From Gracilinanus agilis (Eukaryota), in the NCBI RefSeq assembly GCF_016433145.1, contig NC_058136.1:47539076-47603075 (forward strand): 64,000 nt of DNA, in the 5' to 3' direction. Under the pieces are notes generated by a model. That model did no database searches, was not told the origin of the DNA, and saw nothing but the letters and a program-made list of their open reading frames with translations. Positions 1,687 to 56,780 of the stretch are shown here, piece after piece. Each line of letters starts with the position of its first letter. The first letter of the stretch is position 1. Both the position numbers and the translations under genes were made by a program.

Positions 1687-1878
1687 CAGTGGTTCCCAAA
1701 CTTTTTTGGCCTCCCACCCCCTTTCCAGAAAAAAAAAATTACTTAGCCCCCTGGAAATTTTTCTTTTAATTTTAATAGCAATTAATAGGAAAGATAAATG
1801 CACCTGTGACCATCACCATTCTCCTGGATCACTGCAGCACCCACCAGGGGGCGGTGGCACCCACTTTGGGAATCATTG
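1687..1878 (+). mobile_element. Non-autonomous hAT (Charlie-type) MITE, family A, copy 1
   Basis: Terminal inverted repeats (TIRs) CAGTGGTTCCCAAA...TTTGGGAATCATTG, perfect 8-bp TSD ATCTAGCT on both sides, 192 bp. Homologous to copies at 46505, 50255 and 55766. Confidence 0.95.
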
Positions 1879-3342
1879 ATCTAGCTGCTATTAAATCCTT
1901 CTCTGCCTGCTTGCAAGCCTTGAGTATGTTGCACTTTGTGTAGTCCTTCTATCCCTCCCTTCTCCCCCCTCTCCCCATTATTCCAGGCACATTTAAGATA
2001 CATCTGTTTGGGATATAAAATAGGAACATTCAAGGGGAGCTGCCATTGATATATGGTGAAAAAATACATGGAGTTGGGGGAACCTTCTAAAAATGTGATT
2101 TCAGAACTGCTCTGCTAATAGATACTATGCAACCTGGGAAATACTATTTCCTCTCTGTAGGCTTCATTTTATTCATCTGCAAAATAAAGGGCTTGGCCCG
2201 TGGAGTGACCAAGAGTGCTACATTTGGAGTTAGACGATGTGTTTGGTCCTTCTGGATCTAAAGTTGAATGGTTCTATACTCCCCTTGCCCATTTGCTGAG
2301 ATGCTGGTAGACCGGTGAAGTTCCTAAGTTCTCAACTCTGGCATATTGTTTCTATTTCCAATAGTTGGGACAATCATGCCAGAAGTTGAGGTCAGTGCTT
2401 CCTTGCCTGTGGGCCTTGCCTACTCCCCTCCCTATCATTTCCTTCATTGGATCCCACTCCCAGTTGTCACAAAGGGCCAGTGAAGGCATCTGTGGGACCA
2501 GATCAAAGACTGAAACTTTCTCTGCCTCAGTAACACCTCCAGTCTCCGAAGGCTGCTCAACAGCTCCCCTTGCCTCCATCCGTGTCTCAGTATAATAAAT
2601 AAGCAAATGTACCTTCTGGAGACTGAATAAATAATGTCTAGCACACAGAGGCATGACTCGTATTCAAATGTATGGAGATGCTGTTGTGATGAATAAAACA
2701 CAAATTCATTTAAAAGCATTGCCAGATTCAGAGCAGCCTTTGGTCATCATGGATCTTCTCTGTCAGTGCATACTAGTCATACAATGCCTACTGAGGGCAT
2801 CTATTGCTTTCTTTTTTTTTTAACTTAAAAAGGATTTATAGATTTAAAGTGGAAAAGGATATTGGCAACTATCTGGTCTGCCTCCCCCATTTTACAGGTG
2901 AAAAACTTGAGTCAGAAAGGGGAAGTGCCTAAAGTCCTTCATGTGGCAGAGCCTGGACTAGATCCTGGGTTCTCTGAGACCAAATATAGCTCTCTGTATC
3001 CCTGCGACATGCTGCCTTCTGGGCTCCTAAATCTCCAAGGCTGAGGACTATAACTTTCCATATAAATATCCACACCGAATCTCAGTTCCCACTCATTAAC
3101 GTTTCTTAATACTTAGCATCTGGTGACTAGCAGTGCCCGTGTCTCCTGCTCTGTTGTACCTCACACTCCCCAAAGACAAGAGGGGCTAGAGACAGTGCCA
3201 CATGTTTGTCACTTCTTAAGGAAAGCCTGTGTTTCGTCAGCTAGATGGGGCAAATTGTCTCATAGGATGATAGGACTAGACCAGAATTTAGAGGCTATCT
3301 GGTCCAACCCTTCATTTGACAGCTGATAAGATTATGTTTAGG

Positions 3343-3570
3343 GGCAATTAGGTGGTGCAGTGGATAGAGTGCTAGACCTGGAGTTAATAAGACTTGAATT
3401 CAAATGAGGCCTCAGATACTTACAGGCTGTGTGACCCTGGGCAAGTTACTTCACCCTGTTGGCCTCAGTTTCCTGATCTGTCAAATGAGCTGGAGAAGGA
3501 AAAGGCAAACCACTTCAGTATTTTCACCAAGAAAATCCCAAATGCATTCACAAAAAAGCCGGACACAACT
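3343..3570 (+). mobile_element. Mar1-type CORE-SINE with RTE/BovB-like tail
   Basis: tRNA-like head GGGGCAATTAGGTGGTGCAGTGGATAGAGTGC, CORE TGTGTGACCCTGGGCAAGTTAC, tail GGAGAAGGAAAAGGCAAACCACTTCAGTATTTTCACCAAGAAAATCCCA...GGACACAACTGA. It appears inserted into an older minus-strand MIR. Confidence 0.8.
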
Positions 3571-7479: not shown

Positions 7480-7514
7480 TTAGGTATAACCTCATCAAGA
7501 AACTTATATGAACT

Positions 7515-16150: not shown

Positions 16151-16510
16151 TCACTATGCATCCTAGTGAGATTAAATAATCTGACCAAGGTTACATAGAC
16201 AGTAATAAACCCTGTATTATTTCCACTCCAGTAATGTCTTCTTAGACCCTCACGAGACAGTATACACTTAGATAGGTATTGTCTTACAAACAGAGCCCTT
16301 AAGTATAACTCATGTCCTAACCCCCACCTCTCACCATACTTGGGGATTTACTAGTGGTTAACAAATGGAGTACCAAGTCCTGCCTTGACCCTACCCCACA
16401 GACAAGTGCTGTGCCTATTCCCACCACCAGTGATCTCGTGCCATTCCCCTTTCCCTCCTCAAGTGGTGGGCTAGTCCTGCCCCCTTTACCTCCCCCCCCC
16501 CCCCCCCCCC

Positions 16511-17508
16511 NNNNNNNNNNNNNNNNNNNNNNNNNNNNNNNNNNNNNNNNNNNNNNNNNNNNNNNNNNNNNNNNNNNNNNNNNNNNNNNNNNNNNNNNNN
16601 NNNNNNNNNNNNNNNNNNNNNNNNNNNNNNNNNNNNNNNNNNNNNNNNNNNNNNNNNNNNNNNNNNNNNNNNNNNNNNNNNNNNNNNNNNNNNNNNNNNN
16701 NNNNNNNNNNNNNNNNNNNNNNNNNNNNNNNNNNNNNNNNNNNNNNNNNNNNNNNNNNNNNNNNNNNNNNNNNNNNNNNNNNNNNNNNNNNNNNNNNNNN
16801 NNNNNNNNNNNNNNNNNNNNNNNNNNNNNNNNNNNNNNNNNNNNNNNNNNNNNNNNNNNNNNNNNNNNNNNNNNNNNNNNNNNNNNNNNNNNNNNNNNNN
16901 NNNNNNNNNNNNNNNNNNNNNNNNNNNNNNNNNNNNNNNNNNNNNNNNNNNNNNNNNNNNNNNNNNNNNNNNNNNNNNNNNNNNNNNNNNNNNNNNNNNN
17001 NNNNNNNNNNNNNNNNNNNNNNNNNNNNNNNNNNNNNNNNNNNNNNNNNNNNNNNNNNNNNNNNNNNNNNNNNNNNNNNNNNNNNNNNNNNNNNNNNNNN
17101 NNNNNNNNNNNNNNNNNNNNNNNNNNNNNNNNNNNNNNNNNNNNNNNNNNNNNNNNNNNNNNNNNNNNNNNNNNNNNNNNNNNNNNNNNNNNNNNNNNNN
17201 NNNNNNNNNNNNNNNNNNNNNNNNNNNNNNNNNNNNNNNNNNNNNNNNNNNNNNNNNNNNNNNNNNNNNNNNNNNNNNNNNNNNNNNNNNNNNNNNNNNN
17301 NNNNNNNNNNNNNNNNNNNNNNNNNNNNNNNNNNNNNNNNNNNNNNNNNNNNNNNNNNNNNNNNNNNNNNNNNNNNNNNNNNNNNNNNNNNNNNNNNNNN
17401 NNNNNNNNNNNNNNNNNNNNNNNNNNNNNNNNNNNNNNNNNNNNNNNNNNNNNNNNNNNNNNNNNNNNNNNNNNNNNNNNNNNNNNNNNNNNNNNNNNNN
17501 NNNNNNNN
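16511..17508. other. Assembly gap (998 N) flanked by C19 homopolymers on both sides
   Basis: Read directly from the sequence. Confidence 1.
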
Positions 17509-17863
17509 CCCCCCCCCCCCCCCCCCCGCACAGGGAAGAGAGAACATGCTCCTAGTGGGCTGCTGGGCAGAGAGGAGGGTGAAGTGAGGAATGTCCTCAG
17601 CAAGTGTAGAGAGAGAGAGGGGAGTGGCCCAAATGCACCACTCCCCTCCAGCTCTGCCACCTGTGAGCCTCCCATGTATCCCCTGTGAGTTCTCATTGGC
17701 TGCTGGGCATAGGGGCGGGGGATATGAAACAATGTCAGCTCTGCCTGTGTCCCTCTGCCTTTCTAGTAATGAACTCTGGGGGTCTGGGGAGGGTGTCTAT
17801 GTGCCTACAAAGAGGGCTCTGCATGGTTTCTTTGGTACCCATGCCATAGGTTCCCCATCACTG
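17509..17863 (+). mobile_element. hAT non-autonomous element, family C; left end lost in the gap
   Basis: Right TIR CCATAGGTTCCCCATCACTG (reverse complement CAGTGATGGGGAACCTATGG), internal duplicated motif GGCTGCTGGGCA...AATGTC, followed by CCATAGAG, which fits the NNNTAGNN target pattern of the other hATs here. Confidence 0.75.
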
Positions 17864-20520: not shown

Positions 20521-23500
20521 TAGGAATCTTTGGATTTTCAATTGAAAGCTGAACTTTGGAGAATCTCTTTTTGGTAGTGACTTTTGAAGTTAAACTTTCT
20601 CAGTTTAAATGGCAATCGAAAGAAACCTCAGGATTTAAAATGGAACCACCTCTTGCCAAAGTTCTGGATATATATCAGTGGCAAGTTTCCTGTGACTGGT
20701 TTGTCAAGTAAATTTAACACATCTTGGCTGCTCACCACTGGGCAAGATAGGAGAAAGCTCTATTAAATAGAGCATGAACAACACATTTAAAAACTATATT
20801 TTATTCTTGCCACTGTCTTCCTTTTATCTCTCCTCATTATAATACTTTGTGTTGGCTTTCTAACAGTAATAGGGCTGCAAGCAAATGAGGCGCTAGGTGG
20901 TATAGATTCAACCAATCATTTTTAGGAAAGAGGAAACTTAAATGGCTTTGCTATGGTTTTCTTGAGGGGAAAAGCGGTCATGTCTAAAAAAATTAAAATT
21001 GCCCCTTTTTTTAATGTGCCATGTAGTCATGACATTGCCAGTTGTGAAGCATCTTTGTAAACATGCCAGGCTGGGTGGAGAAGGGCACCATCTTAGACCT
21101 ATTAAAAGATTTAACACTTTTCTCATGGAATGCCTGGCCTATTACTTTTTAATCTTTTGCCAAGATGGGATTTATGAGAATGTTGGCCCTGCTGCTATGG
21201 CAACAGCAAGTAATATGCCTCAACTATTTCTGTGTAGCTAAGTGTGTGCTGAGGGAATATCTGCCATCCTGTTAAGAATACAGGAAACTGTACAGGAAGG
21301 AGTTTTAAACTTTCCCTTATTATATAGTCTGTGGCATCAAAATGCCATGTCGCAATTCTTTTGGGGGGTCCAAGATGCTCTCTGGGCATTAGTTATTCTG
21401 CCTTGGTTCCAAAGGCATCCCTCACTTTTTAGACTGGGAAAACATTTCCACCCCAAACAAATTGGTACAAGCCTTAGAAAGAAAACATTTACTTTCGAAA
21501 CAAACACGACTGAAACATTCCCCCAAGAAAACAGCCACAAACACACGAGGTTGTGAAAATATACAAGAAAATATGGAAAGGTGCATGTCAAGAAAATAAT
21601 AAGAATAATTGCTCTAGCCCTAGAGCCCGATCAGAGAGGGTAAGTGGATTAAAGGAATCCAAGCTCCCCAAACAACTCCTCCCGAACTCACAGAACCGTA
21701 AAATAAACAATAAAGGAAAGGGGCAAAATGGGTAAAGTACCACATATTAAGATAAAAGGCCACTCATTCTTTAAAAAGGAACAAAACAGAGGGTAGAGGC
21801 AATTAAAAACACTACAGAGCAATTCGATGAGAAAAACACAGAAGTAAAAGTCAGCCAGTCATGATAGCTTGAGATATATTCCAAATAATCAGGCAAGAAT
21901 TGACAGTGCTAAGAAAATCACAAGCCCAAATAAAAGAGGAGCTTGAAGAATTACAAGAGGAGTTCAATAGATAATTGAGACATAAAAAAAAAACCTTAAA
22001 ACATTTAAGAAAAGGAAGAAATTAAACCTATAATTTAATTTATATGGGAAACCTCTAGATAAGGAAATTCTATTCTTTTAACACTGAAATTAGGATAGAA
22101 AAAGTCCCCTCCCCCCCTGCCAAATACAGAGAAACTATCAAAAGGAGACTCGTTTACTTCAGTGGAAGATAGAATTCAACACAATTCAGAGAAGCTGGAA
22201 ATACAGGTCCCAAATCCCCAAATGCCTGAAGTATGGTATTGTCATTGTTATAGAGATCAACGAATTATACAAAAGAAAATTTCCAGAGTTTGCAGAAGAA
22301 CTACCAAGAGATAGAAATTTTTAAAAATTCCATAGGAACTTGGTAAGGAATAACTTAAGATTTAACACGCTTAGTCACTATGATCTTACACAGTACAACA
22401 GTAATAAGCTTCCAGCAGAAGTTAAAAAATGATAAAGGAACATTACTTTGGACCGTAGACCATACATAACATAATTTTCAAGTAGAACAAGAGAGGATTG
22501 CAGAAATGGACCTTCATTTATGCAATTAAGCATGGGCCATAAACACAGACTTTTCTCCCCAGCAAAGTTCAGCATGCTCAATGAAGGAAGAAATGGATAT
22601 TTGAGAAGCAAACAGATTCGTCAAAGTTTGCGGAGACACATGGGGACACGGATTTAGAGCTGGGAAGGACATTAGATGCGTTCTTCAAGATAGTCTTTGA
22701 AAAACCAGCTAGCCTTTAATCCCTAAAGATAAGTTTTTAAAACAATCAAAGTAAAGCATTTACTAAGAAAAAGTGAAATTCTCAGCCCTTTATATTGGCT
22801 AGGAAATGGCACAGGGGGAAGGGAAGAACACTAGAGGTAAAGGAGAGGAGAGAGAGTAAAATATGTGAAAATAAAATTATTGTCCCTGGTAAAGAGAGAT
22901 TGGATAGAATGTGCTTTGAAATCTATTCATCGTAACACTAAATGGAAATGAGCTAAACTGCACCTCCCTCAAAAAAAAATAAAATGGAAGAGTCATAGAC
23001 TGTGTTAAAAAGTAGATGAAAACAATATGTTGTTTAGAGGAAAAATATTTAATCCAGAAATATTCATTGTGAAAGAATGACTTAAAATATATCACGTTAT
23101 TCCCAAATTTTGGAAAGTACATAGAGATGGCACTACTAAAATTGGACAAAATTGGTTACAAAGCAGAAGGTATTAGAGATAAACATTATGTTGTGCTTAA
23201 ATGGATTCATACTAAGGGAAATGGAAGAAATATTAAATATATATGTAGTTAATAAAGTGACATCTTACAAATGTCTAGGAATTAGATTAAAAATAAACAA
23301 TTGTGGAGTATTTTAAGACTCCATTTATCAATGATAAATCCAACTAAATGGTGAGCAAGAAAGAAATCATAGTTAAGCAAATCATTAAATAAACGAGATC
23401 TATTAGATAAACGGAGTGAACTCAATAGGATAAATGTAGAGAAATGTTTATTGATTGATAGAGTAGTCCTTTCTTTCTAGCATTCCTGATACTTATATAA

Positions 23501-24895
23501 AATCGATTACATGCAGGGTCATCTAGGCAAATACTGAAACATAGACGTATAGAGAGAGCATGATATAATAGGAACAACATTAAATAATATCATGAAAATA
23601 AAAAGTATAGGACTTCATGGAAACTAAGACTTGGTGTATTGAATAACTGGGTAAATGAAAAAATTATAAAGAAGAAAAGGAGACTATATTAATGATAGTG
23701 GCAATACTGATGCTACAAATAAAAAAACATATGGGAAGCAGTATGTTATATAAAGCCATAAAATATCAAGCTGTATTCAGAAGCCAATTTATAGCTATTA
23801 ATGTTTATATCAATAGGAAAGAAAATGAAGAAATTGTCTGAATTTAAATATCTTAAGAAAGTAGTTACTAATTAATATATACATTGCATATATAATATCT
23901 ATACATGAAACAGAAGAGGAGCAAACAAGATCAAAGTAGGAATTACTACAACTAAAAAAGAAAACTATTGATAAGTTATTGTCAGCTCATTTATTAAAAG
24001 ACTAACAAAAGTGATGATCATGTAGTCTAGGAAGAGAGAGAATAAGACAGCCTGAACTACCAAAATTAGTGCAAAAGAAACTTTAAAAATTATTTGTGAT
24101 TGTTATACACAATTCTTTGCTATTCTGAGAACCTAAAAAAATGGATGTTGACTTGTAAAAGTCTAAAAGACCTGAACTAGTAAAATGAGATGTAGATGAT
24201 CTAAATAAAGCTATCTGAAAGGGTAAATTAGGCAGGCTATTAAACAAAAATAGCTGCTAGCAAAAAGAAGACAGGCCTAGATGGATTCATCTGATTTCTT
24301 TAAACTTTTAAAGAAAAAGTAACTCCTTCTTATTGATAGCCTTTAAAAGCAATTAGAAATGACTTTTAACAAAATTTAAAATCAATTTAAAGAAATTACT
24401 TTTTTAAAGGAAAAAAGTAACTCCTTTGCCTTATTAACAGTTTTAATGTAGAGATAAAAAGTGGGCGATCTAACTCCATACGTGAAACCAATGTGATCCT
24501 GACCCAAGACAAATCTGAAGAAGAGAACCCTTTGAACTAATATCATTATATAAATACCGAAGTATTAAACCGAATACTCATAATACAACTAAGCATAAAA
24601 AGGAAGAGGAGTAGGGAGTCCTCTAGGAATAAGTAGACTCTGTTAGTGGAGTACAATGATTATTTAATATCAGGGAATAATTAATATAATAAAGCTTATC
24701 CAGGAAGAATAAAGTTTCTTATTCTGTCATCAGAAGTGCATTTATCTTTAAGCAAAACATAGTCTTTTGTGTTAAAAAAAATTAAAAAGATATAAGATAG
24801 ATATATTTCAGCAACATGAAAAATCAATGTGGACTGTCAAGTGAGTGTTATATGTAATTATCACATACCACTTGTTGTGATCAGACGCTATATAC

Positions 24896-25100
24896 CAGGG
24901 GTCGCCAACGTATGGCTCTCGAGCCATATCTGGCTCTTTTGAGGGCCAGATATGGCTCTTTCTGCAGGAGCCATAAAGTTCATTTTTTTTTCAGGCGCTG
25001 TTACAGGACGCACTGTGAGCACTGTAAGGCTTTCATGAAATTACATTTTAAAAAATGTGGCATTTATGGCTCTCACAGCCAAAAAGGTTGCCGACCCCTG
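24896..25100 (+). mobile_element. Non-autonomous hAT MITE, family B
   Basis: TIRs CAGGGGTCGCCAACGT / AGGTTGCCGACCCCTG, perfect 8-bp TSD CTATATAC, 205 bp. Internal 14-bp inverted repeat GAGCCATATCTGGC...GCCAGATATGGCTC. Inserted in L1. Confidence 0.95.
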
Positions 25101-29964: not shown

Positions 29965-30002
29965 GTGTCTGAGGTGGTGCTTAGTAAAAGATTGATACTC
30001 TT

Positions 30003-31356: not shown

Positions 31357-31439
31357 TTCAGCCAACTTTGTTTTTTTTTAAAAATATAATTCCCCAAATT
31401 CATTTCTAGAAGGACTTTAGAAAGATAAGTTTCTTAATT

Positions 31440-33150: not shown

Positions 33151-33179
33151 CTACAAAGTAAACAACACAGTCATCGCAA

Positions 33180-35400: not shown

Positions 35401-35639
35401 GATTCAGGAAACAGTATGGAGACGTTGGAGCTTCTTGAGCAATGGGATGAGGTAGCATGGTCAGACCTATGTTTTAAAAACATTTTGCTGAACAATGATA
35501 TGACAGTTCATAAAGTAATTGGTTTTATCTCAGTTCCCAAAATAGTACCATAGAACTTCCTAACCAGATATAGTGTTCAGGGGGAGGAACGTTGTAGCCC
35601 CAGTGAGACTTGCCCTTGTCAGATAGCATCTAGCGAATT

Positions 35640-36130
35640 TCACTTCGTTCTGGTTGCCCTCTTAAAGAATGGACATTGATAAACTGGGCCACGTCTTAAG
35701 CAGGGTGAGCAAGTGGAAAAATGAATACAGATTCTGCTGTATGAGGATGAGTTGAAGGAAGAGGGTAAGGCTAGTTCAGAGGCAGAGAAGTAAAGACTTA
35801 GGGAAAGATATGATAAATCTTTAGAGATCTGAAGGTTTATTGGGTGAGCAATGGGACTAGGCTAGATCTGGTTGACTCTACTGGATGCAGAACTAGCGCT
35901 GAGACAGTGTTATAGGGGAGCAGATTTGGGTTTCCCATTAGCAAACCCTTCCTAACAATGAATGTTATTCAATCCTGTAATGATCTGTCTGGAGGAGTGG
36001 TGTGCTCCCTTTACTGGAACCCTATACACAGAAGTTACATGGCCAAAAATGAAGCAATGTCATGGGCAGAATCCATGATCTAGGCATAGATTACATTAGA
36101 TAACCTCAGAGGACTCTTTCAACTTTAAAA
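35640..36130 (+). mobile_element. CR1/L3 3' fragment
   Basis: GGACATTGATAAACTGGGCCACGTC...TATGAGGATGAGTTGAAGGAA...AAACCCTTCCTAACAATGAATG. Confidence 0.6.
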
Positions 36131-39670: not shown

Positions 39671-42199
39671 CAATTCTGTAATTCTTGAGAGAACTATATT
39701 AGTGTTTAGCCACAGTTGAAGCCTTCCAGGAGTCTAAAGATTCCATTCCATCAGTAGCTTTCTTGACTTTCCTGACAGGAACATACTATTTCTTCACTAG
39801 GGTGCCAGCCTTGTGCCGAGGAGTATAAGACCCATTTTAAAATCGAAGGGAAAATCCATTTCTGTTGTGGTTTAATTGTTCTCATTCTACCTCATAAAAT
39901 TGTAAAGAATGTACTTTGTAAAACTTAAAGTCCCATAAAAATTTTCCCCCTCCCTCCCCCAGATCAAAAGCCTTGTTCCCAATCTGCTATTCACATCCAT
40001 TCATCCAGGGAAGCAAACCCTGTGGATCAGGGAGCAGCCAGGATTTGAGCCTTGCTACCTGCCATCCAGTGGCTACAGTTGGGCCAAGCAAGCCAGTCGA
40101 ATTAAAGTACAAAGACATCATGAGGGAGAGAGATAGGGGGGCAGCATGTCCCAGGAGGGATCGAACCAGTACACCCACCTTGCTCATCATCTCCCTTGAG
40201 ATCCAGAGTGGAGACATTCTAGCACTCATCAATCCTAGTATGAATGATTTCCCTTCTCCCATCTCTGGCCCATTTCTCAGCCTGATTCTATAGCTATCCC
40301 ACAGGAAACTGTCACTGTGTGCCTAAGGGATCTCTCCCTACCCAAAAGAATCACTAAGTTGATCCCCCATGGCTACAAGTCACAGAACATCACTGCACGC
40401 TTAGAATTAAATTATGCAGGAGATGTGGAATACAGTCTGCCATTAGAGAAACATATACTGGAAGGAAGGAGGCATTGGTCAGGTATGAAGAACAAAAGAT
40501 GATCTCTGAATAGCATGACTAGATCACTGATGTTAATGCAAGGAGAGAATTAAAGAAAGACCCTCAGCGAGTTGAGGAGGTAGGAGTGGAGGCTGGACCC
40601 TTGTGGAGATCTTATGGACCCGATCTGCTCAGGTTGGACAAATATAGATGGATCAGGATCTGTTTCTTTGGAGGAAATAAGCAAACAGTTACAGGGCTAT
40701 CAAAGGATGCATGGATACTTTAATAATCAATGACTTCATTGCAAAGACTGGAATAGGGTAAGATGGTGAAAAATACATTGGAAAATACAGCTCAGGATTA
40801 ACAAATGAAAGAGACCAGAGGCTTGAAGATGGCCCCAAAGCATCCTATCCACAGAACATAAATATTTTCTTTAAGAAAATTAGCAGGCATGTGACAAACA
40901 CTAAATAATATCAGTAAAAGGTTTATTGACTATTTTTAATAGAGAAGAAATGACTATACACCAATCTAGGGTCCATTTCTAAATCAGTAATGTGCAGAAT
41001 TGCTTGTTAAAGCAACAAGAAGAATCAATACCAAATTAGAAGAAAAAATAAAGATAAGAAGACATTATGGCATGCAATTAAAAGGGACTCCAGTTTGAGC
41101 TTTACATTTAAATAAATGATGCCAGAATAATGGGAAATGGATAAATGACAAGATATCAAACTGGATGATTATTATCCCATAGATGTTTGGCCAATATAAA
41201 TTAATTGCCAGAAAGGAAAGACCAGGAGAGTCTAAAAACCATCTCGGCCAACAAGACTCATCTCCCTGCCAAGTAGAATGATACAGCAGCCAAAGGCAAC
41301 ACCGCTATAGAATGTAAGCTCATTTGTAGCTAGGGAATGTCTATAGCTCTTCCTGACTGTCTATCTCCCTAGCAACTATACTTTGCTGCCTCCTAAGTAT
41401 AAGAAAGGGGCCCCACAGTCCCTGGTCTTACAAGCTCAAGCACTTTACTGTATTTCATTTGGACTTTTAGTATAAACTGAAAGTATCTTTGGGCTTTTAG
41501 TGCCACCAATCTTGCTTCTGTCTTATTCGTTTCTTTGAAAAGGCCAACTGAAATGAAAAGTTTCTAAAATGTGAAAAAAAAGTATTTTAGCATAGATTGG
41601 ATGAGGAAAGAGCCCAAGAGTTGGGAGATCTGCATTCTTGTCCTGGTTTTGCTAGTAACTAGTTGAGTGACTTTGCATAGGTCTCTTTCTCACTCTGGGC
41701 TTCAGTCTTTATCTGTCATGTGAGAAGATTGAATTGGATAATATCCCAGATCCTTTCTAGTTCAAGAATATATTCTTTTAAGGGAACAGTCAAAATTACA
41801 CACACATACATATTAAAGATTTCCTTCTTTTGCTTAGCTGCCTACCCACTGGAAAAGCCAGGCAGGTCTTGGGGCAGATGGCAAGTGCCAATCACATGAG
41901 ACCAGAGTCCTGCTCGTGAGTGATCTGTGTTTGTATTGGCATGCTCTTCAGATGCAGGAGAAGAAAAACAGAGCTGGAGATGACAGTTACATTCAGGCAA
42001 GGAGTCCAAATATTTCAGCGAAAATTAAATCGCTGTTCTCTTTTTCCCTCACAGAGAGAGACAGAAGGAATTTTTGAATCCTGGCAATTCTTATTTCCAT
42101 AATCCTTCCATTTCTCAGGATCAGATGAACTGTATTTGCCTGGCAGAAAGTTAACTCGGACTCAAATTACATCTCTATGAGAAATATTCCAATCTCGTT

Positions 42200-44590: not shown

Positions 44591-44664
44591 AAAGTTCATT
44601 CTCAACTAAAAAACTTCTCGCAAAGAGTTCTTTGTGAGAAGTTTTTTAGTTGAGAATGAACTTT
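44591..44664. repeat. Near-perfect palindrome with 36-bp arms and a 2-nt spacer
   Basis: AAAGTTCATTCTCAACTAAAAAACTTCTCGCAAAGA-GT-TCTTTGTGAGAAGTTTTTTAGTTGAGAATGAACTTT, 35 of 36 positions complementary. Confidence 0.97.
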
Positions 44665-46299: not shown

Positions 46300-47416
46300 T
46301 CTCTTTTTAAAAAAACAACCCAAACATTTATTAAATTAATTAATTTAGAATATTTTTCCATGGTTACATGATTTGTATTCTTTCCCTCCCCTCCTTCCTT
46401 CCCCCTTCCATAGCCAATGAGCAATTCCACTGGCTTTTATATGTATCATTGATCAAGACCCATTTCTATATTATTAATATTTGTAACAGAGTGATCATTT
46501 AGAGCAGTGGTTCCCAAACTTTTTTGGCCTACCGCCCCCTTTCCAGAAAAAATATTACTTAACCCCCTGGAAATTATTTTTTTTAAATTTTAATAGCAAT
46601 TAATAGGAAAAATAAATGCACCTGTGGCCATCACGGCTCCCCTGAATCGCTGTAGCACCGACCAGGGGGCGGTAGCGCCCACTTTGGGAATCACTGATTT
46701 AGAGTCTACATCCCCAATCATATCCCCATTGAACCATGTGATCAAGGAAATGTTTTTTCTTCTGTATTTCTACTTCCACAGTTCTTTCTCTGGATGTGAA
46801 TAGTTTTCTTTCTCATAAGTCCCTCAGAATTATCCTGTATCATTGCAATTCTGCTAGTAGGGAAGTTCATTACGTTCGATTGTCCCATAATCTATCAGTC
46901 TCTATATACAATGTTCTCCTGGTTCTGCTCCTTTCACTCTGCATCTATTCCTGGAGGTCATTCTAGTTCACATGGAATTCCTCCAGTTCATAATCCCTTT
47001 TAGCACAATAGTATTCCATCACCAACAGATACCACAATTTGTTCAGCCATTCCCCATTCAATGGACACCCCTCATTTTCCAATATTTTGCCACCACAAAA
47101 AGCAAGGCTATAAATATTTTTGTACAAGTCTTTTTCCTTATTATCTCTTTGGGGTACAGACCCAGCAGTGATATGGCTGGGTCAAAGGTCAGACAGTCTT
47201 TTAAAGCCATTTGGGCATAGTTCCAAATTGCCTTCCAGAATGGTTGGATCAATTCACAACTCCACCAGCAGTGCATTAGTGTCCCAAATTTGTCACATCT
47301 TCTCCAATATTTATTATTTTCCTTTGATGCCATATTGTCCAATCTGCTAAGGTGTGAAGTTGTACCTCAGAGTTTTTTTGATTTACATTTCTCTAATTAT
47401 AAGAGAGTTAGAACAC
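46300..47416 (-). mobile_element. 5'-truncated L1 (ORF2 Cys-rich C-terminus plus 3' UTR) with a nested hAT MITE
   Basis: ORF 47058-47342(-) WRRCDKFGTLMHCWWSCELIQPFWK...FDPAISLLGLYPKE is the L1 ORF2 C-terminus. 15-bp TSD TATGTCCTTCTTCTC / TATGTCCCTCTTCTC. Confidence 0.93.
46505..46696 (+). mobile_element. hAT MITE family A, copy 2, inserted in an L1 3' UTR
   Basis: TIRs CAGTGGTTCCCAAA / TTTGGGAATCACTG, perfect TSD ATTTAGAG, 192 bp. Confidence 0.96.
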
Positions 47417-49168
47417 TATGTCCCTCTTCTCAGCTGAGATACTATGGGAGAATTTCTGCTTGAACGAGATGAGATATCTCACTCCCAATGAGAGAGCTCA
47501 TTCATTTTGTATATTGTATATTTTGTATGCTTCATCTGATTTTTGTTTGCTCTCTGTATAGATAAATGGATTTATTTGCTTTTCAACACACGTATTGCTC
47601 ACATGAGCAGGATAACCTGTGGGTTGCCCTTTGTTTTCACAAAATTAGCATCGAGGTCAAGTGGGCACACCAACAAAATCTGAGGCAACTGAAGAAAACC
47701 AAGACAATTTTTTCCAAGGAAAAAATCCATGAAAACTGAAACCAACAATAATTGATGTCAATGAAAAATGAGGTATTGCTGTATTAGCACACCCACCTCT
47801 TTATTTCCCTTTGGGTGATCCTTTGGTAGTTGTGATATGCTAGGACTCCCAGACATATAGCTGAGTGATATTGATGTTTGTAAGGTAGGCTTTAGTTTCC
47901 TGGAGAATCCTGAGGATCTACTCCCAACTATGCTTTGAAGTCATTAAGTATCAAAGTATAAATTAATTTAATTTAAAGGATCTTATTCAAGTCTCGACAG
48001 AACTTCTCCTTCCATATCCTCTGCAACAGATAACTGTGCATATGTGAACAGAATCCACACACTGGTTTTTTTTCTGTAAGTACTTATCATCCCTGAGATA
48101 TGAAATGACCAAAAATCCCAGGAAATTATGTTTGTTTCTTATGGCCATTGAGTGCATGATAAAATCAACCCTACCATTTCCTTTATTCCCCTCTTCAAGG
48201 ATTACCTATGGGCCATCCTTCCAGTTAGTTGCAGTTTTCTTCTTTCTCATGATTTCATTTATAGCAAAAATCTCAAGATAGTTCCAATTCTGTTTCTCTA
48301 GAAGTATGTGCCATTAGTCAGGGTATTAAACATTAGAGAACCAACACCAAAGTTAAAATTTATAGACAGTCTCAAAATGGCCTTATTCTTAGTTTGCTTT
48401 GCTTTCCTATTTCGCCACTGTGTGGCCGTCATGAAAGAAACAGGAATCTACGCAAAATTGAGGGCCATTTTGTAGTTATCTTTGTTAATGGGTTGACATG
48501 GCCAAAATACTCATCACTATGTGGTGAGTCAATCCATGCTTAAATCAACTGGTCCTATCCATTTCAGACTAGACTCAAAACCTAGTAGAAATTGTCAGAG
48601 TTTATACTCTACTGTCATAACTTTTTGGAATCCAGGTTCACCTTCACAGCATGAATGAGATGTAATAGTTGTCCATGGCAGAGACTGACAATTTACCCCA
48701 AGAATATACCACAGTAGAAAGTTGGAGATTGATAAATGTCCATTGTGGAACAATTTTGCCCTTCTAGGAAGAAAACAAGCCCAAACCATTTGTTTCATAG
48801 GTAGAATAGAAAGGCGAGATTGAATAGGTTTCTTGGTCACCTATTTTTGTGTGTGCCTGTTTCCAAAGAAATTTGACGAGAGCTAAACAAAAATTTGTGG
48901 AGAAACATAGATGTAGAAGGGACATTAGAGAGCCTACAGTCCAATTCCTTCGTTGTAAACATAGGAAAACGGAGATGCAGAGAGGATGAATGGGGTAACT
49001 AGTCATTGGCAGAGGCACACCAGAAAAGAACTCTCCTAATTCCAGTACAGTGCTTGTTCCACGCTAGCCTCCATCTCATTTTCCTTCACTTATTTTTTTA
49101 ATATGAGGAAGGTCACCGTTTGGCAGATGACATGGAAAGTGTGGGCTGCTGCAGTAACTTGGGCACTC

Positions 49169-49417
49169 TATAAAAATAGGATTTGGCTGTGCTCCGAGGA
49201 CGCTGCCTTGGGGAGATGTCTAGACGAACCATAGCAGAGCAAGCCAGCCAACACTTTCTGTCCTATCCAGCCACTGTTTACATAAATATACTGGTCAATC
49301 CCACAAGAATGGTAAGTAGTTATGATAATGCCTTTGGTTAAAGCAGAAGGACTTTTTCTCATGTAAAAATAATCTAAAGGGCACAGAAAATGGAACATCA
49401 TTGGGTCAAATGGTTCA
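49169..49417 (+). promoter_or_regulatory. Candidate TATA promoter and first exon with an intronic DR3 element
   Basis: TATAAAAA at 49169-49176; ATG at 49216 opens 32 codons to ATG|GTAAGT (donor at 49312); GTCTAGAC at 49218-49225; TGTTTAC at 49275-49281; GGGTCA-aat-GGTTCA at 49403-49417. Confidence 0.4.
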
Positions 49418-50254
49418 AATGAAATCATGCAGCATTTTGACACTTGATCTCACAAGAACATGATTTTTTATATTTGTGATCCAAGTGACAGTGAGAGATC
49501 AAGAGATCAATCACGTACTGCATGCTCAATATGTATCAGAGGGAAGGAGACCCATGCAAGGCACAACTTCTAGCCCTGGACTTAGAGACAGGAAGGCCTG
49601 GGTTCAAATGTGGCTTCACACACTTATTTGCTTGAAGAGCCTAAACAAGTTATTTAATCTCTCTGTGTCTTAGTTTCCTTCTCTGTAAAATGAAGGAGTT
49701 GAGCTTGATGGTCTCTAAAGCCTCTTCAAGCTTGTTCAGGGACAGTCTTCTATTCCTGCCTGTGCCCCCTCATTCTATCTTCTGCCATCCTTTCCCTAGC
49801 CTAGCTACCCTTGCTTGTTCTTTGTAATAGAGACATGGGAGAGGAGAGAAAATTTCGGTTCATAAAATGAACAGTGAGCAAGCTCTGTAGCAAATTCTAC
49901 TGAAGAGAATGGGCTCGTCATTCTTTGCCACATTTGAAATCTTCTCAGTAGCAAAACTCTGTACTACTTTTTCACACTTGTCTTCATTTCCTTTTGGGAT
50001 AGAATAAGAAATTATCTGTAACATGATTAGCACAGTTCTTGGCATATAGTAGGTGCTTAAGAAATGCTTGTTCATTTTTTCCTCCCCTTCAAAGAAATCG
50101 TGAAGGATACTTAAGTCACCCGGTCCTAGGCTGAGTGAAAAGATATAGTATACCTAAGGTAGGGTTACTAGAACTTTGTCTTAGGCACCAACATTTCAAA
50201 GGGGCTGGCATCATCACTTGCCATTTTCCAGCCATTTCTTTCCATTGCTTAGAA

Positions 50255-50447
50255 CAGTTGTTCCCAAACTTTTTTGGCCTCCCGCCCCCTTTCCAGAAAA
50301 AAATATTACTTAGCCCCCTGGAAATTAATTTTTTTAAATTTTAATAGCAACTAATAGGAAAGATAAATGCACCTGTGGCCATCACCACCTCCCTGGATCG
50401 CTGCAGCACCCACCAGGGGGCAGTGGCGCCCACTTTGGGAATCACTG
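50255..50447 (+). mobile_element. hAT MITE family A, copy 3
   Basis: TIRs CAGTTGTTCCCAAA / TTTGGGAATCACTG, TSD GCTTAGAA / GCTTAGAG, 193 bp. Confidence 0.95.
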
Positions 50448-51008
50448 GCTTAGAGGGAGAGAGAGCTTTCTTCAGCAGTTTCCCTACAGGTGAACTCCTC
50501 CTTATCGCTTTTGGGGTGGCCTGTCCTAGCTATAGCTTGGCTGTTTAAAGCTCTGAGTGGTTGCTCTTGTGCCGCTTCCCATCAGTATGTGCCTGCCCCA
50601 TTCTTCCAGGGTAGGCAGGCAGTCACTAGTACAAGGTGTAGGCCTCCATGACTGGAGGCAGCAGAGTGAACTGTTCAGTCTCAATGACTTTAGCTCTTAA
50701 GGATGTAAAAGGATATCTCTCTCTGCTTGTAATCTCTGTCTGATTGCCTCTGGACATTTGGATGGGGAGGCGGGGAAACTGGCAGGATTGGTTCCTCTAT
50801 TTGTTATCACATAGAACCGAAAACATCCCATGGGTGTCCCTTTTCTTATATACATGTAGTACTGTAGGGCATGATTTTTTGCTGTGAGGCCTTAAAAGAT
50901 TTAGGAATTACCACAGAGGAGCATAAATCGTACAGGAAAGCTCTTTCATTCCGATACGAGTTTTTTCTCTGTCTTTAGGGGTTTTGATACGTTGATATTT
51001 GTGGTTAC

Positions 51009-51113
51009 CTGCACATACTTATGTATATGGACAGGAATTTTTCCTATAGGTTTAAAGAAAGCGCCATCACATGTATAATATGGGGAGTCGCCATTAGGTG
51101 CTTTTTTTTTTTC
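51009..51113 (-). other. Candidate 105-nt phase 0-0 exon, unassigned
   Basis: Acceptor CTCCTGTATCTTTTTCAG|G, donor CAG|GTAACC. The only open frame is EKKKAPNGDSPYYTCDGAFFKPIGKIPVHIHKYVQ. Confidence 0.25.
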
Positions 51114-51169
51114 CTGAAAAAGATACAGGAGTTTCAGAGAACCGCAAGCTCAATAGGAGTTAGAAAGCT

Positions 51170-51790
51170 GATATGGCAACTCAAAAAAACCTGAATGTGA
51201 TGTTGGACTGCTTGAACAGGGCCATGGATTCCTGGAATAACAAGGTAACAGTCTTGCCATAGTCTTGTTTCTGTTCCAATCAGCCCACATCTACAGTACT
51301 GTTCTCAGGTCCAGGCATTGCTGTTGAGGGTGAATGTTGATAAGACAGAGAATATCCAGAAGAAGGCAACCATGATGGTGGAGGACATTGGGCCTATGCT
51401 ATAGAAGGCGTTTTTCATGTGGAAAAGAGAATGCCTCAAGGGGCCATCAGAGCTGTATTCCAGTATTAGGAGACCTGTCACGTGAAGGAGAATTTAGTCC
51501 TACTCTGCTTGGCCCCAGAGAGCAAAGTTGAGAGGGGTCAAAGGTAGTGGCAAAGAGGACGTCAGGAAAAAAACTTCCTCACAATGTTTCACTGGGAAAT
51601 GGAGTGTCCCAGGAAGTGGGAAGTAGGCTTCACAGAAGGCCTGCAGATTCCTGATAAATGATCAATACCTGTTGAGGATGGTGAAGGCAGGATGTCTCGT
51701 TAGGTCATGATGAGACTAAATGGCCATTGAGGTGCCTTCCAGCTCTAAGTTTTGTGCATCTGTATGAACGATCCTGACTCAAGGCCAATT
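51170..51790 (+). mobile_element. CR1/L3 3' fragment
   Basis: CCCACATCTACAGTACTGTTCTCAGGTCCAGGC (PHLEYCVQFW-like)...GAATATCCAGAAGAAGGCAACCATGATGG. Confidence 0.7.
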
Positions 51791-54700
51791 TAACATTCCC
51801 TCACCTGGGTTATAATTAATCTCCAGCAACGTCACAGATCTACCCATACATGTAGTACTCTGTCTCTCAGGCACCATCTAAGGGCACTTGTGGTTCTGGG
51901 CCCTGGCCTTCATCCCATGACAATCATTCTATTCGAGGAGCTATAGACAATGATCAGGAGAAGCCATTTTCGCCTGTGTGGACATTAGTTATTCCAAGGA
52001 CACTCTCTGAAAAGGAGTAAGGTGAAGGGAGGTTATTATTGTTGCTGAGATAAATGATCAGAGATAAAGACTTTTTCCCTTAGTGTATCATACAATTAAT
52101 TATTGCTCTTGGACCTGTTATAAATGTGATCATCTAATTAATTGTTGCTACCGTGACATACATTAAAAATAAAGCACCCTTCTCAGGCACGTGTCCACAG
52201 AATGAATCCTGATTTATTTTTGGTAAATTACAAGCCAGACCTCACATGGGATAGTAATGCAATGACGCCAGGGATAAGATGAGCATGAAAGGACACTGGA
52301 TCATAGAACAAGAGATGAAAGAGACCTTAAGGTTCATCTGGTCCAATATTATTTTACAAATGAGGAAACTGAGATAATACAGAGAGATTAAGTGAGTTGT
52401 CCATGAGCTTGTAGATAGTAACGATCAAAACTAGAATTCAAATTCAGGTCCTCTGACTCTGGTAGACTACAGTGCCTAAAAAGATCTATGTGGCATTGAG
52501 TGGATTTCCTCTTAAAGATTTCTGGGAGAGTATGGTTGGGAATATCACAGGATGAAAGGCCTGGGCCTCAACTGTTTAAGATATCTTATAAATCTCACCA
52601 TTGCTGAGGTCACAGCTGTTGAACTAGCCAAGGGTTGCACACTACCTTAATGTAGTTTGGGGCCAGCTAAGTTATTGATAGTGTAAGAATGCACTCCAGT
52701 AATAAGAATCAAGTGGGGTGCTCTGCTCAGTTGCTACTTTTCCCTTGAATCTTACCTGCCATTTAGTTTGGTATCTTAATGCGCTTGTGGTGTGACATTG
52801 CATGTTATCATTATTGGTGCCGGTCCCTTAGTCTCTCACCTCCTGTCCCATCATGCCATTTCCCCAACTGGCAGCACTATTTTCTGGTATTATGCTGGAC
52901 CCCAGTGTATCTGAGGATAATGTGTTTTTCTAGGAGATACCTCTTATCTTCTAGTACCTCCATTGGACCCCTTCCTCATGCAATCAGGTACCTAGCTTCT
53001 CCAGCCATGAAGTGTTAGGGCAACCGAGGCTCCTGGCCAAGACATCCACAAGTCTAAGTATGACTTGTCCCAGCAGTAAAACTGTGGATCTGTGGTTTTC
53101 TGATCAGACTCAAAGCCAGGGTCTTTGTTCTTGGAAGGGGGCATGAGAAGGAAGGGTGTGGCCCCAGATAGACATGCAGCCCAGATTGAAATGATGGAGA
53201 ATAAGGAGGATCTGAGGCAAGATGTCGTTTGGCGGTACTCCATTTTCTGTGCTCCTTGCCCCCCACCACTTCATCCTCTCCGCTGAGTCCTGGCCCTTTA
53301 TTGAGTCAATTCCTGTTTTGTTTCCTAGTCCCCTGCACCTCGATCTTCTTTGCCTTATTCCCTTGAACTCTCTGGATGAGTGAAAGCAGCTGTACTGCTA
53401 CAGGAAGGCTTAGGGTGCAAGTCAGGGGCCATGATGATCCCTTTCCCCCCTCCTCCCCAAACAGCCTGCTCTTGATATTGTCTACAAGACAGCTAAATAG
53501 CTGAAGCCCCTTCTTCATCCCACCCTCTCCCAGCCCCCCAAATACAACAGAACTAATTCATCCAGCACATGGCTGGAAAATTGCATGCCTGGCCAGTCTG
53601 GTTAGCTTAAGAAACCAAGATCTGCACCTGAATAAACTGGTCTGTAAGCCCGATTGCCAGAAAGAATGCCGTCCTCCTACAGAAATAGGTTGTAGAAACT
53701 GTCAAATGTTGAAATGCGTGCACACACACGTATGTATGTGCGTCTGCGATGGGAAAGCAATCACCACTCAAACATTTCTTGTTTTCACTGGAAAGAATTC
53801 CTTGACATTTTTCCTCATCTAGCAGACATCAAATATTCTAGGAGTCCTGGGCACACGTACATACATTCCCTGGCTTTTTCTTTGTATCATCTGGGAACCA
53901 AGAGGGAGTTTGGCATGGTGAATTATGAGTCAGACCAGCAGTCCAGAAGATCTGAGTTCAAAGTAGGTTTAAAGGAAAGAACTCCAGAGTTGGAGTTAGA
54001 AGACCTTGGTTCAAATGTCAGCTCTATCACTTCCTCTGGGACCTTGTTTAATTCACTTGACCTTTCTGAGTCTCAGTTTTCTCTTTTGTAAAATGAGAGT
54101 GTTACAAGAGATGCTCTCTAAGGTCCTTGGGAATCCACAGTTTATACTTCCGTGTTCCTGCCTCTGATATCTACTAGCTGTGGGATCATGGCAAACTTCT
54201 TTTTTTCTTTTTCTTTTCTTCTTCACTTTTCTTCTCGTTCCCATTCCCTCCTCCAAGCAACTTTCAAAGACTAAAAATTCCAGAGGAGTTGCAACTCTGT
54301 AAAAATAGAGGAAGTTGCCACACTGGGATGTCCCTCATACTCTTGACGACAAAGGCTAAAAAAATCATGGTGGAAAGGATATGATGTCATAAATGTTGAA
54401 AATTTAACAATCAAGCTGGAAATATCTTTAAATACTGAGAAAAAGGAAAACCAGATAGGCAAGCCCTTGTCACCTATCAAAAGACAAGACGCTTTCTTTC
54501 CCTAGCTAAGACAAGTCTACAAATCATATCATTGGAGGAATCATTAGTTCACTTGAGCAATAAAACCCTAGATCAAAATTCTCTGGCTTTTGATTCCAGC
54601 ACATACCCTGCTAAAATATGATCAGGTGCCTTCTCAGTTATGATCTTCATTAGCTAACTCCCACCCGCACATCTAGGAAGTGGACGTAAGTGATACAAGC

Positions 54701-55329
54701 AATAAAGGGTCCGTGGGGTCCAAGATGGGACCTGATTGTTCCCCCCACCCCTTGCTGGTGAATAAGACACCTTTGTTGATTTAGGAACTTTGGGAAGCCT
54801 TTGAGCTTGCTCTTTTTTCTTTACTTTTCTTTTTATATGCAATTCAGTTCAGAGACTGCACCTCAAGGGAAGGATCATAGAAGAGATTAGGGGAGAGGGA
54901 GAAATGGTTAGAACTGATTTTCTGGCCTTTAATAGAATACGAAATCCTTTAACCTAGAATGGCTAAGACATTTTCCTAGCATTTGCATCAAATTGATATG
55001 CTCAGCTGAACCAGAATTATACATACCCATTATTGCTATTATATCTAGTATTTTATCAAGTCTATTTTGATGTAATTGTGTGGGTTTCCACCTAATTTAT
55101 TCCATGCCTACATGACATCCAGAAATTAGAAAGCTCAGCGCACTTCCTGGAGAGAAGGCAGACCCTATTTCCTTCCCTGCTACCTTTTCCACTCTTCACA
55201 GTTTGACTTTTAGTCTTGAGGATTCCAACTAGTGTGATGACTGTTGGGTTCCAACACATTTCTGGAGTTTGTTATGATCAAGAATAAGACATAGACCTGT
55301 CTGTGAGAAGTTTACTAACTAGTAGGAGA

Positions 55330-56780
55330 AGATGTCTATCCCTGTGATGCAAGGCCCCATGGGATGTCTTCAGTAATAGAGGCAGAAACACAAATACATG
55401 GAAACACAAAAGAGGGAAGAGGAAGGAGAGATTTGGCTAAGTATATGGAGTGGCCAAAATCCCTGAGGAGGGTAATGACAAAGTGTGGCTGGAGGTAACT
55501 GAGAATGGTTTGGTTTGGACTAGGGAGCATGTAGGAGGAGGAGTGAGAGGTCAGAGTGGAAGGCCTGGTAGTATAGGTTCTTGACTGATCCAGTTCATTA
55601 TTTTGATGCTTCAGAAGCTTGTGGATTAGAAGAATGGCATAATGAAAACAGGATTTCAAGGGATGAATCCAGTGACAGGATGAATTGGTGAGGAGCCCAG
55701 CCGTGAGGGAGTTGAGAAAGCTTAAAGAAGGAGTGATGAAGAGAGTTACAACAGACAGGTTAGAGCAGTGGTTCCCAAACTTTTTTGGCCTTCCGCCCCC
55801 TTTCCAGAAAAAATATGACTTAGCACCCCCTGTCACATACTATCACTGTCCCCTTACAGTATTCACTGCCCCCAAATGCACCTGTGGCCATCACCGCCCT
55901 CCTGGATTGCTACAGCACCCACCAGGGGGCAGTGGTGCGCACTTTGGGAATCACTGGGTTAGCAGTTAAAACAAGACTTAGTGAGTGATTGGTTATGGAA
56001 AGCAGAAGGAGAGTAGAAGAACAGTGAGATTTTGAACTTGGGTTACAATTGATGTAATTATCATTTGTAATTATCAATTATCATGTATAATAATGGCTCA
56101 TTTAACATGGCTCTGGAGGAGATTTAAGTGAATGAAGTTAAGGGCACAGGTAGAAGGGCTAATTTGGAAAAAAAGACAATAGAGAAGAGAGAGTATGAGG
56201 TGCTACAGAAGATCTCCATAGAGATTTCTTCAATTTATATGAGGGCTTGGCAGAAATGTACTAATAGTGGATAAGAGGCAGCTCAGTGGCATACCTCCTT
56301 TCAAGGCAGGAAGTGGGCAACAAACTAAAACTTTGTGTCTTGGCAGGATGAGTTGCAGGGTGTACTCAGCTCAGTGAGCAAGCTTGGTATGCGGGGCAGT
56401 TTGCTTCAGCAGTTAGTGAAAAGACTAGTAAGAATAATAGTATATTAAGGCTCTCATTTCCAGGAGACCAAAAGGGTAATGGGAAATTTGTGGTGATTTT
56501 GCACAGTTTGTGCCATTTCTTCTGTTTCTGCCAGCATCAAGTAACAGACATGCATTAAATGCAGGGCAATCTTTTCTTGGAAGAGAATGTGAAGGGGATG
56601 AAGAAACATCTGCCTAACCTCTAGTCTCACAGAGAGAATAAGGGGTGTCTTGAAAGAACAGAAGAAGGAGGATTTAAACAGGCAGAAAGAAATTCTAACC
56701 TGTTTGGAGAGTAGAAGAGGGTGAGTGAGAAGAAAGGAAAAGACTGGAGTTTTTGACAGACTAAAATGATGGGTCATATT
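55330..56780 (-). mobile_element. Fragmented L2, interrupted by hAT MITE copy 4
   Basis: Purine-rich L2-antisense sequence on both sides of the MITE, e.g. GTGAGAGGTCAGAGTGGAAGGCCTGG. Confidence 0.55.
55766..55956 (+). mobile_element. hAT MITE family A variant, copy 4, with a different internal segment
   Basis: Same TIRs and subterminal sequence, TSD GGTTAGAG / GGTTAGCA. The AT-rich core of copies 1-3 is replaced by GCACCCCCTGTCACATACTATCACTGTCCCCTTACAGTATTCACTGCCCCC. Confidence 0.93.

What the first reader, a model, noticed from the sequence alone, without database searches (positions are those of the whole stretch)
1687..55956. A hAT MITE family carries a consensus CTCF core motif; four co-oriented copies, three around a candidate promoter
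Seen: each family-A copy has a subterminal motif, CCACCAGGGGGCGG (1841-1854), CGACCAGGGGGCGG (46659-46672), CCACCAGGGGGCAG (50410-50423) and CCACCAGGGGGCAG (55919-55932). Three match the CTCF core consensus CCASYAGRKGGCRS at 14/14 and one at 13/14. All four point the same way. Three lie within 9.3 kb and bracket the candidate TATA promoter at 49.17 kb. The CpG-decayed form (GGCAG) still fits the consensus, so the site would survive deamination. The variant copy 4 swaps its core but keeps the motif. Known: retrotransposon-driven CTCF site expansion is documented in mammals, including a SINE in opossum (Schmidt et al. 2012, Cell), and CTCF orientation governs loop anchoring. Inference: a DNA transposon may have seeded lineage-specific insulator or loop anchors.
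Basis: partly seen in the sequence, partly recalled or inferred. Interest (0 to 1): 0.75.

Follow-up and report, generated by a model that had tools for sequence, protein, structure and literature searches.

The report
Opossum-type hAT MITE carrying CTCF motif
Four copies of a roughly 192-base dead cut-and-paste (hAT) transposon each carry a textbook binding motif for the genome-folding protein CTCF, but the motif is part of the transposon's own end structure, decays like the rest of the element, and no binding, insulation or promoter could be shown, so it is an ordinary case of a known way that such motifs spread.

Summary
Four copies of a 191-193-bp hAT MITE lie on the + strand at 1687-1878, 46505-46696, 50255-50447 and 55766-55956, each with an 8-bp target-site duplication. 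Each has the CTCF core 25-38 nt from its 3' end. Three match at 14/14 and one at 13/14; about 0.005 matches are expected by chance.

- The motif's G-rich half is the element's own subterminal inverted repeat.
- The motif differs from the consensus as often as the rest of the shared arms (5.4% against 5.2%).
- Its CpG is lost as often as the other CpGs.
- Co-orientation (p = 0.125) and clustering (p = 0.19) are not significant.
- Co-oriented sites cannot form a convergent pair around the "promoter". That promoter is only a TATA-like word, with no coding sequence found downstream.

DNA-transposon spread of CTCF sites is already documented: hAT-Charlie MER20 and MER91B in human, and hAT families in lamprey. 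The opossum ChIP study named only the SINE MAR1_Mdo.

This scan has already noted the same family on other pieces of this genome; six of those notes, five with follow-ups, were shown. Verdict: a real feature and a new member of a known kind, with function unshown.

The parts
1687..1878 (+). MITE copy 1. The flanking 8-bp TSD ATCTAGCT lies at 1679-1686 and 1879-1886. The CTCF core at 1841-1854 matches 14/14 and keeps its CpG.
46505..46696 (+). MITE copy 2. The TSD ATTTAGAG lies at 46497-46504 and 46697-46704. The CTCF-like core at 46659-46672 matches 13/14; the second C is changed to G.
50255..50447 (+). MITE copy 3. The TSD is GCTTAGAA / GCTTAGAG. The CTCF core at 50410-50423 matches 14/14, with its CpG decayed to CA.
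55766..55956 (+). MITE copy 4, a sister subfamily with the same arms and an unrelated central stretch of about 45 bp. The TSD is GGTTAGAG / GGTTAGCA. The CTCF core at 55919-55932 matches 14/14, with its CpG decayed to CA.
50281..50321 (+). 5' subterminal repeats in copy 3: CCGCCCCCT near the TIR, and GCCCCCTGG at 50313-50321. Both are inverted counterparts of the G-rich half of the 3' CTCF core.
49169..49316 (+). It is listed only because the finding names it. It is not supported as a promoter.

Best explanation
These are four independent insertions of a non-autonomous Charlie-like hAT transposon (a MITE of about 192 bp). They sit in what looks like non-coding marsupial DNA.

The CTCF-consensus word lies 25-38 nt from the 3' end. 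Its G-rich half (AGGGGGCGG) is the inverted counterpart of CCGCCCCCT, which sits at the matching position of the 5' end, and a third copy (GCCCCCTGG) lies further in. Short subterminal repeats of this kind are what hAT transposases normally dock on (inferred from general knowledge of hAT elements, not tested here). The CCACC half completes a CTCF core by accident of the master sequence.

Every copy has the motif because every copy descends from that master and is still young. Copies are about 4-6% from their common ancestor. That is roughly 13-20 million years at the marsupial neutral rate quoted in PMC3621081.

Since insertion the motif has decayed neutrally. The shared orientation and the loose cluster are chance, or possibly local hopping. 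The copies are potential CTCF sites, and some family members may well be occupied, but nothing here shows binding, insulation or a link to a promoter.
For: - hAT hallmarks are present: 8-bp TSDs fitting the Charlie-like NYYTARRN pattern and a CAGTG (YARNG) terminus (definitions in PMC3014272).
- CCAGGGGGC pairs perfectly with GCCCCCTGG in the 5' half.
- Aligning the 5' ends with the reverse-complemented 3' ends shows the run CCCCCT at matching positions, invariant in all six ends of copies 1-3.
- Copy 4 swapped its centre but kept both arms. This is expected if the arms are what transposition needs.
- Motif cells differing from consensus are 3/56 (5.4%), against 28/537 (5.2%) in the homologous arms. 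Variable columns are 2/14 against 27/137, Fisher p = 1.
- The motif's CpG is kept in 2 of 4 copies. The three other clear consensus CpGs are kept in 7 of 12 cells (read from alignment A1).
- Substitutions are mostly transitions; K2P distances are 0.08-0.13.
- Orientation p = 0.125 and clustering p = 0.19.
- Two metagenome elements (L017, L052) share about 48 nt of the 5' end, including a CCCCCTGG subterminal repeat. This repeat is therefore a transposon feature that also occurs outside this family.
Against: - Four copies give almost no power to detect selective constraint on a 14-bp motif.
- The core is a perfect 12-nt match (CCACCAGGGGGC) to the strongest class of CTCF words (my own knowledge of the JASPAR-type consensus). 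Such words are often occupied.
- Binding was not tested.
- None of the 120 other elements that share the 5' terminal 19-mer carries a CTCF core. The full motif is therefore special to this family rather than generic to the TIR type.
Confidence: 0.75

Rival explanations
1. The MITE-borne motifs are genuine CTCF-bound sites, and the family has seeded lineage-specific insulators or loop anchors, including the three forward-facing sites at 46-56 kb.
For: - Three exact and one near-exact consensus cores lie in a window where about 0.005 are expected.
- Other TE families with a consensus CTCF motif are bound and act as anchors: B2, the dog SINEC families and MAR1_Mdo; hAT-Charlie MER20 and MER91B in human; hAT-Tip100 and hAT-Charlie in lamprey.
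- The CpG-to-CA change keeps the consensus.
Against: - No occupancy data could be obtained.
- The opossum liver ChIP-seq study names only the SINE MAR1_Mdo as the carrier of over-represented bound words, and never mentions a hAT or DNA-transposon carrier.
- The motif and its CpG decay like the rest of the element. Decay of the CpG argues for germline methylation rather than protected occupancy.
- Copy 2 is mutated at the second C, which I recall to be a near-invariant position of the CTCF matrix (own knowledge).
- The sites are co-oriented, with no reverse-strand partner downstream in the window, so they cannot form a convergent loop around 49.17 kb.
- The promoter itself is unsupported.
Confidence: 0.2
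2. The CTCF motif serves the transposon. By recruiting CTCF or cohesin to its end, the element would shield itself from silencing, or bias excision and reinsertion towards open chromatin. On this reading the motif was selected in the master element rather than in the host.
For: - The full core is specific to this family among elements that share the same terminus.
- It sits in the subterminal region where protein binding matters for transposition.
Against: - This is purely speculative, with no data here.
- The G-rich half is explained by the inverted subterminal repeat alone.
- No autonomous master was found to compare with.
Confidence: 0.05

Closest known systems
hAT-Charlie MER20 and MER91B as CTCF loop-anchor and TAD-boundary sources in human (PMC9902604, PMC6979391)
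   Same: A non-autonomous hAT-Charlie-type DNA transposon whose copies carry CTCF motifs, so motifs were spread by cut-and-paste transposition.
   Different: MER20 and MER91B are ancient eutherian families with demonstrated CTCF occupancy and loop anchoring. The element here is a younger family of a marsupial-type genome, with no occupancy data.
hAT-Tip100 and hAT-Charlie repeat families enriched at CTCF ChIP-seq peaks in Arctic lamprey (PMC5504073)
   Same: Lineage-specific, recently propagated hAT DNA transposons associated with CTCF sites.
   Different: The lamprey families were defined from ChIP-seq peaks (odds ratios 18-50). Here only the motif is seen.
MAR1_Mdo SINE expansion of CTCF binding in opossum (Schmidt et al. 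2012, PMC3368268)
   Same: Same host lineage is likely. A repeat-borne M1-type core is spread to many loci.
   Different: MAR1_Mdo is a retrotransposon with shown binding (hundreds of events). The MITE is a DNA transposon and is not mentioned in that study.
Horizontally transferred hAT families of opossum: OposCharlie1 (OC1) and SPIN
   Same: Charlie-like hAT, MITE derivatives of about 190 bp, NYYTARRN-type 8-bp TSDs, and a similar age range (PMC3621081, PMC3014272).
   Different: OC1 termini (CAGGGGTCCTCAAACT) do not match. The SPIN terminus (CAGYGGTTCTCAACCT) matches 14 of 16 only. The family's name and its autonomous master remain unidentified.

Membership tests
hAT superfamily, non-autonomous (MITE) | 8-bp target-site duplication | tested here: met
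   Matches of 8/8, 8/8, 7/8 and 6/8 flank the four copies.
hAT superfamily, non-autonomous (MITE) | Short terminal inverted repeats with a YARNG terminal motif | tested here: met
   The ends are CAGTGGTTCCCAAA and TTTGGGAATCACTG: 14-nt arms, 86% complementary in copy 3. The YARNG definition is from PMC3014272.
hAT superfamily, non-autonomous (MITE) | Charlie-like target preference NYYTARRN | tested here: met
   The TSDs are ATCTAGCT, ATTTAGAG, GCTTAGAA and GGTTAGAG. All have the central TAG, and most flanking positions fit.
hAT superfamily, non-autonomous (MITE) | An autonomous partner encoding a hAT transposase with the same ends | tested here: inconclusive
   No such element is in the window. 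L017 and L052 share about 48 nt of the 5' end but have no long ORF.
OposCharlie1 (OC1) | OC1 terminal sequence and arms | tested here: not met
   The OC1_Das consensus begins CAGGGGTCCTCAAACTATGGCCC. It shows no similarity to these copies beyond the generic Charlie terminus.
SPIN | SPIN TIR CAGYGGTTCTCAACCT | tested here: not met
   14 of 16 positions match.
Functional CTCF binding site | Match to the core motif CCASYAGRKGGCRS | tested here: met
   Three copies match 14/14 and one 13/14. The source of the consensus was checked in PMC6746451.
Functional CTCF binding site | In vivo occupancy by CTCF and cohesin (ChIP) | not testable with these tools
Functional CTCF binding site | Motif more conserved than its surroundings | tested here: not met
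   5.4% against 5.2% of cells changed. CpG kept in 2/4 copies against 7/12 cells elsewhere. Power is very low with four copies.
Loop anchor pair or insulated neighbourhood | Convergent orientation of the two anchors | tested here: not met
   All four sites face forward. The only reverse-strand near-match (40059-40072) lies upstream of the cluster, and none lies downstream.
TE-driven CTCF site expansion | The family consensus carries the motif, and many copies are dispersed | tested here: inconclusive
   The consensus of the four copies carries the motif. Dispersal is suggested only by this scan's unchecked notes from other windows. The genome-wide copy number was not measured.

The most novel reading that the evidence does not exclude
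This hAT MITE family is a sizeable, so far unreported source of CTCF-occupied sites in the opossum lineage. That would be a DNA-transposon wave alongside the MAR1_Mdo SINE wave. Forward-facing copies such as those at 46-56 kb would act as stacked left-hand loop anchors.
Probability: 0.2. Interest if true: 0.5.

Novelty: new member of a known kind. Interest (0 to 1): 0.25.

Why it matters
If the family were shown to be bound, it would add a cut-and-paste transposon to the repeat-driven CTCF expansions known in marsupials. It would also offer a natural series of motif-intact and motif-mutated copies for testing how young TE-borne sites gain or lose occupancy. As it stands, the finding shows that a perfect CTCF word can arise as a by-product of a transposon's terminal repeat structure. 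Motif presence, shared orientation and proximity to a TATA word therefore do not amount to evidence of an insulator.

Tried and rejected

2. A search for more family copies found none.
   - The metagenome scan with the 5' terminal 19-mer gave 120 loci (0.77 Mb). They share only the terminus, and none carries a CTCF core.
   - Three scans of viral contigs found nothing.
   - The genome-contig scan with an internal 21-mer gave two chance matches, in an archaeal MAG and a Pedobacter, both unrelated in context.

3. The family could not be named.
   - It is not OC1.
   - The SPIN TIR matches only 14/16.
   - The SPIN and OC1 source papers (Pace 2008, Gilbert 2010) are not held.

4. The hairpin or pre-miRNA reading of the MITE is rejected. 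The DNA fold gives z = -0.89, and there are no Rfam hits in the window.

5. Promoter and gene context found nothing in support.
   - There is no coding ORF downstream of 49.17 kb.
   - There are no Pfam hits for the ten ORFs scanned, chosen from those of at least 90 aa.
   - TATA-like 8-mers are common in the window.
   - The sigma-70 scan is irrelevant to a eukaryote.

6. The supplements of Schmidt et al. 2012 hold no per-family table of bound repeats.
Full report
**Observation.** An exact scan for CCASYAGRKGGCRS finds three matches in the 64-kb window, at 1841-1854, 50410-50423 and 55919-55932. All are on the + strand, and 100 shuffles gave none. With one mismatch allowed, 46659-46672 (CGACCAGGGGGCGG) and an unrelated minus-strand site at 40059-40072 are added. 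Base composition predicts about 0.005 matches per window.

Each of the four + strand motifs lies inside one copy of a repeat. blastn of each copy against the window finds exactly four members, all on the + strand. Read from the sequence and the alignment, the elements and their 8-bp target-site duplications are:

| Copy | Coordinates | TSD |
|---|---|---|
| 1 | 1687-1878 | ATCTAGCT, 8/8 |
| 2 | 46505-46696 | ATTTAGAG, 8/8 |
| 3 | 50255-50447 | GCTTAGAA / GCTTAGAG, 7/8 |
| 4 | 55766-55956 | GGTTAGAG / GGTTAGCA, 6/8 |

Copy 4 has an unrelated central stretch of about 45 bp but the same arms.

**Assembly gaps.** The gaps are at 16511-17508 and 26028-26156. They touch no copy and lie between copy 1 and the other three. 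Only copy 1's distance and relative orientation depend on the scaffold. Copies 2-4 lie in gap-free sequence. Continuity across the gaps could not be tested.

**What the element is.**
- The CAGTG terminus (YARNG), the 8-bp TSDs and the central TAG of the TSDs fit the Charlie-like hAT families with NYYTARRN targets tabulated for Anolis (PMC3014272).
- It is not OposCharlie1, whose consensus starts CAGGGGTCCTCAAACT (supplement of PMC3621081).
- Its terminus matches the SPIN terminus at 14 of 16 positions.
- The family name and the autonomous master remain unknown.
- Pairwise K2P distances are 0.08-0.13, with transitions dominating. Each copy is thus about 4-6% from the common ancestor. At the marsupial neutral rate quoted in PMC3621081 (3.21e-9 per site per year) this is roughly 13-20 million years. 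With four copies this is a very rough figure.
- The element does not fold into a notable hairpin (z = -0.89), and the window has no Rfam hit.

**Where the motif comes from.**
- Within copy 3, CCAGGGGGC (50413-50421) is a perfect inverted repeat of GCCCCCTGG at 50313-50321.
- I aligned the 5' ends of copies 1-3 with their reverse-complemented 3' ends. The run CCCCCT sits at matching distances from both termini and is invariant in all six ends; the full word is CCGCCCCCT in most of them.
- The G-rich half of the CTCF core is therefore the element's own subterminal inverted repeat. In hAT elements this kind of short repeat is normally where the transposase docks. That is inference from general knowledge, not tested here.
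- Only the CCACC half is private to the 3' end.
- Two metagenome elements (L017, L052) share about 48 nt of the 5' end, including a CCCCCTGG repeat. The repeat is thus a transposon feature that also occurs outside this family.
- The full 14-nt core is not generic. None of the 120 elements sharing the 5' terminal 19-mer (0.77 Mb of contigs) has it.

**Is the motif under constraint?**
- Against the four-copy consensus, 3 of 56 motif cells differ (5.4%), against 28 of 537 (5.2%) in the homologous arms.
- Variable columns number 2/14 against 27/137, Fisher p = 1.
- The motif's CpG survives in copies 1 and 2 and is CA in copies 3 and 4 (2/4). The three other clear consensus CpGs survive in 7 of 12 cells (read).
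- So there is no sign that the motif, or its CpG, was protected. A CpG decaying at the usual rate suggests germline methylation rather than stable occupancy.
- Four copies give very little power, so this is absence of evidence and not proof of neutrality.

**Arrangement.**
- Four copies sharing one orientation has probability 0.125. Three of four falling within 9.45 kb of a 64-kb window has probability 0.19. Neither needs explaining.
- Co-oriented CTCF sites do not form the convergent pairs that anchor loops (established knowledge).
- The only reverse-strand near-match lies upstream at 40.06 kb, and none lies downstream of the cluster. The cluster therefore cannot "bracket" anything as an insulated loop on the evidence in this window.

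**The candidate promoter.**
- It is a TATA-like word at 49169-49176, followed about 130 nt later by ATG and then GTAAGT.
- Such 8-mers occur 21 times in the window, against 12.5 expected.
- No coding ORF lies downstream.
- None of the ten ORFs scanned, chosen from those of at least 90 aa, hits Pfam.
- The only coding-like remnants look like LINE fragments. One is a weak RVT_1 hit at 60462-60665.
- The promoter is therefore unsupported.

**Binding.** I asked for ChIP-seq runs holding 46300-56100. 

In the literature, the opossum liver CTCF and STAG1 ChIP-seq study attributes the opossum-specific bound motif-words to the SINE MAR1_Mdo. It reports hundreds of events with M1-type motifs only. It never mentions a hAT or DNA-transposon carrier (PMC3368268). 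Its supplements hold no per-family table. This is weak evidence against massive binding of the MITE in liver. It is not decisive, because their word analysis normalises by background occurrence.

**Comparison with what is known.**
- hAT and tcMar elements are among the families enriched for CTCF sites in human and mouse (PMC7156512).
- In Arctic lamprey, recently propagated hAT-Tip100 and hAT-Charlie families are strongly enriched at CTCF peaks (PMC5504073).
- Spread of CTCF motifs by a DNA transposon is therefore an established kind. This would be a new member, in a marsupial-type genome, with function unshown.

**Earlier notes of this scan.** The same family has been noted before on other pieces of this genome; six such notes were shown, and five of them had follow-ups that reached the same conclusion. 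I tested two of their claims myself.
- That the motif is part of the transposon's end structure: confirmed.
- That close relatives with the motif occur in arthropod DNA: not reproduced with my pattern. My loci share the terminus, and in two cases the CCCCCTGG repeat, but not the full core.

**Verdict.** The functional reading is unproven, and several of its specifics are not supported: the promoter, the bracketing, the meaning of co-orientation, and the novelty of the route.

Noticed in passing
L001-L120 (metagenome contigs, for example JGI24158J21664, JGI24159J19872, JGI24021J15306, Ga0210059, Ga0081606): A handful of JGI metagenomes hold more than 120 contigs with eukaryote-type hAT MITEs that start with the same 19-nt terminus as this family. 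They have quite different GC-rich subterminal repeats, such as GCGTACCAC or TTACCCC. This is probably host DNA of an unidentified animal in host-associated samples.
   Followed up: partly
L017:2074-4013 and L052:1-2338 (minus strand): Two longer elements share about 48 nt of the 5' end with the window's MITE (about 84% identity), including the CCCCCTGG subterminal repeat. They have no long ORF, and no 3' terminus lies within the contig. They may be decayed relatives of the unknown master element.
   Followed up: partly
window 47058-47342 (-), 57960-58187 (-), 58756-58950 (-), 60462-60668 (+): Short ORFs whose translations look like LINE ORF2 fragments. One gives a weak reverse-transcriptase (RVT_1) hit, E = 3.4e-5, below Pfam's cut-off.
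   Followed up: partly
window 22000-36000: A long stretch with strongly positive AT skew (up to +0.22) and low GC (0.31-0.37) on the + strand. This would fit a large A-rich sense-strand LINE block. It was not examined.
   Followed up: no
window 44591-44664: Another note of this scan records a 74-bp near-perfect hairpin here, about 1.8 kb upstream of MITE copy 2. I did not examine it.
   Followed up: no
window 16317-17732: The long ORFs listed here on both strands (353-471 aa) run through the assembly gap at 16511-17508. They are artefacts of the N run.
   Followed up: yes
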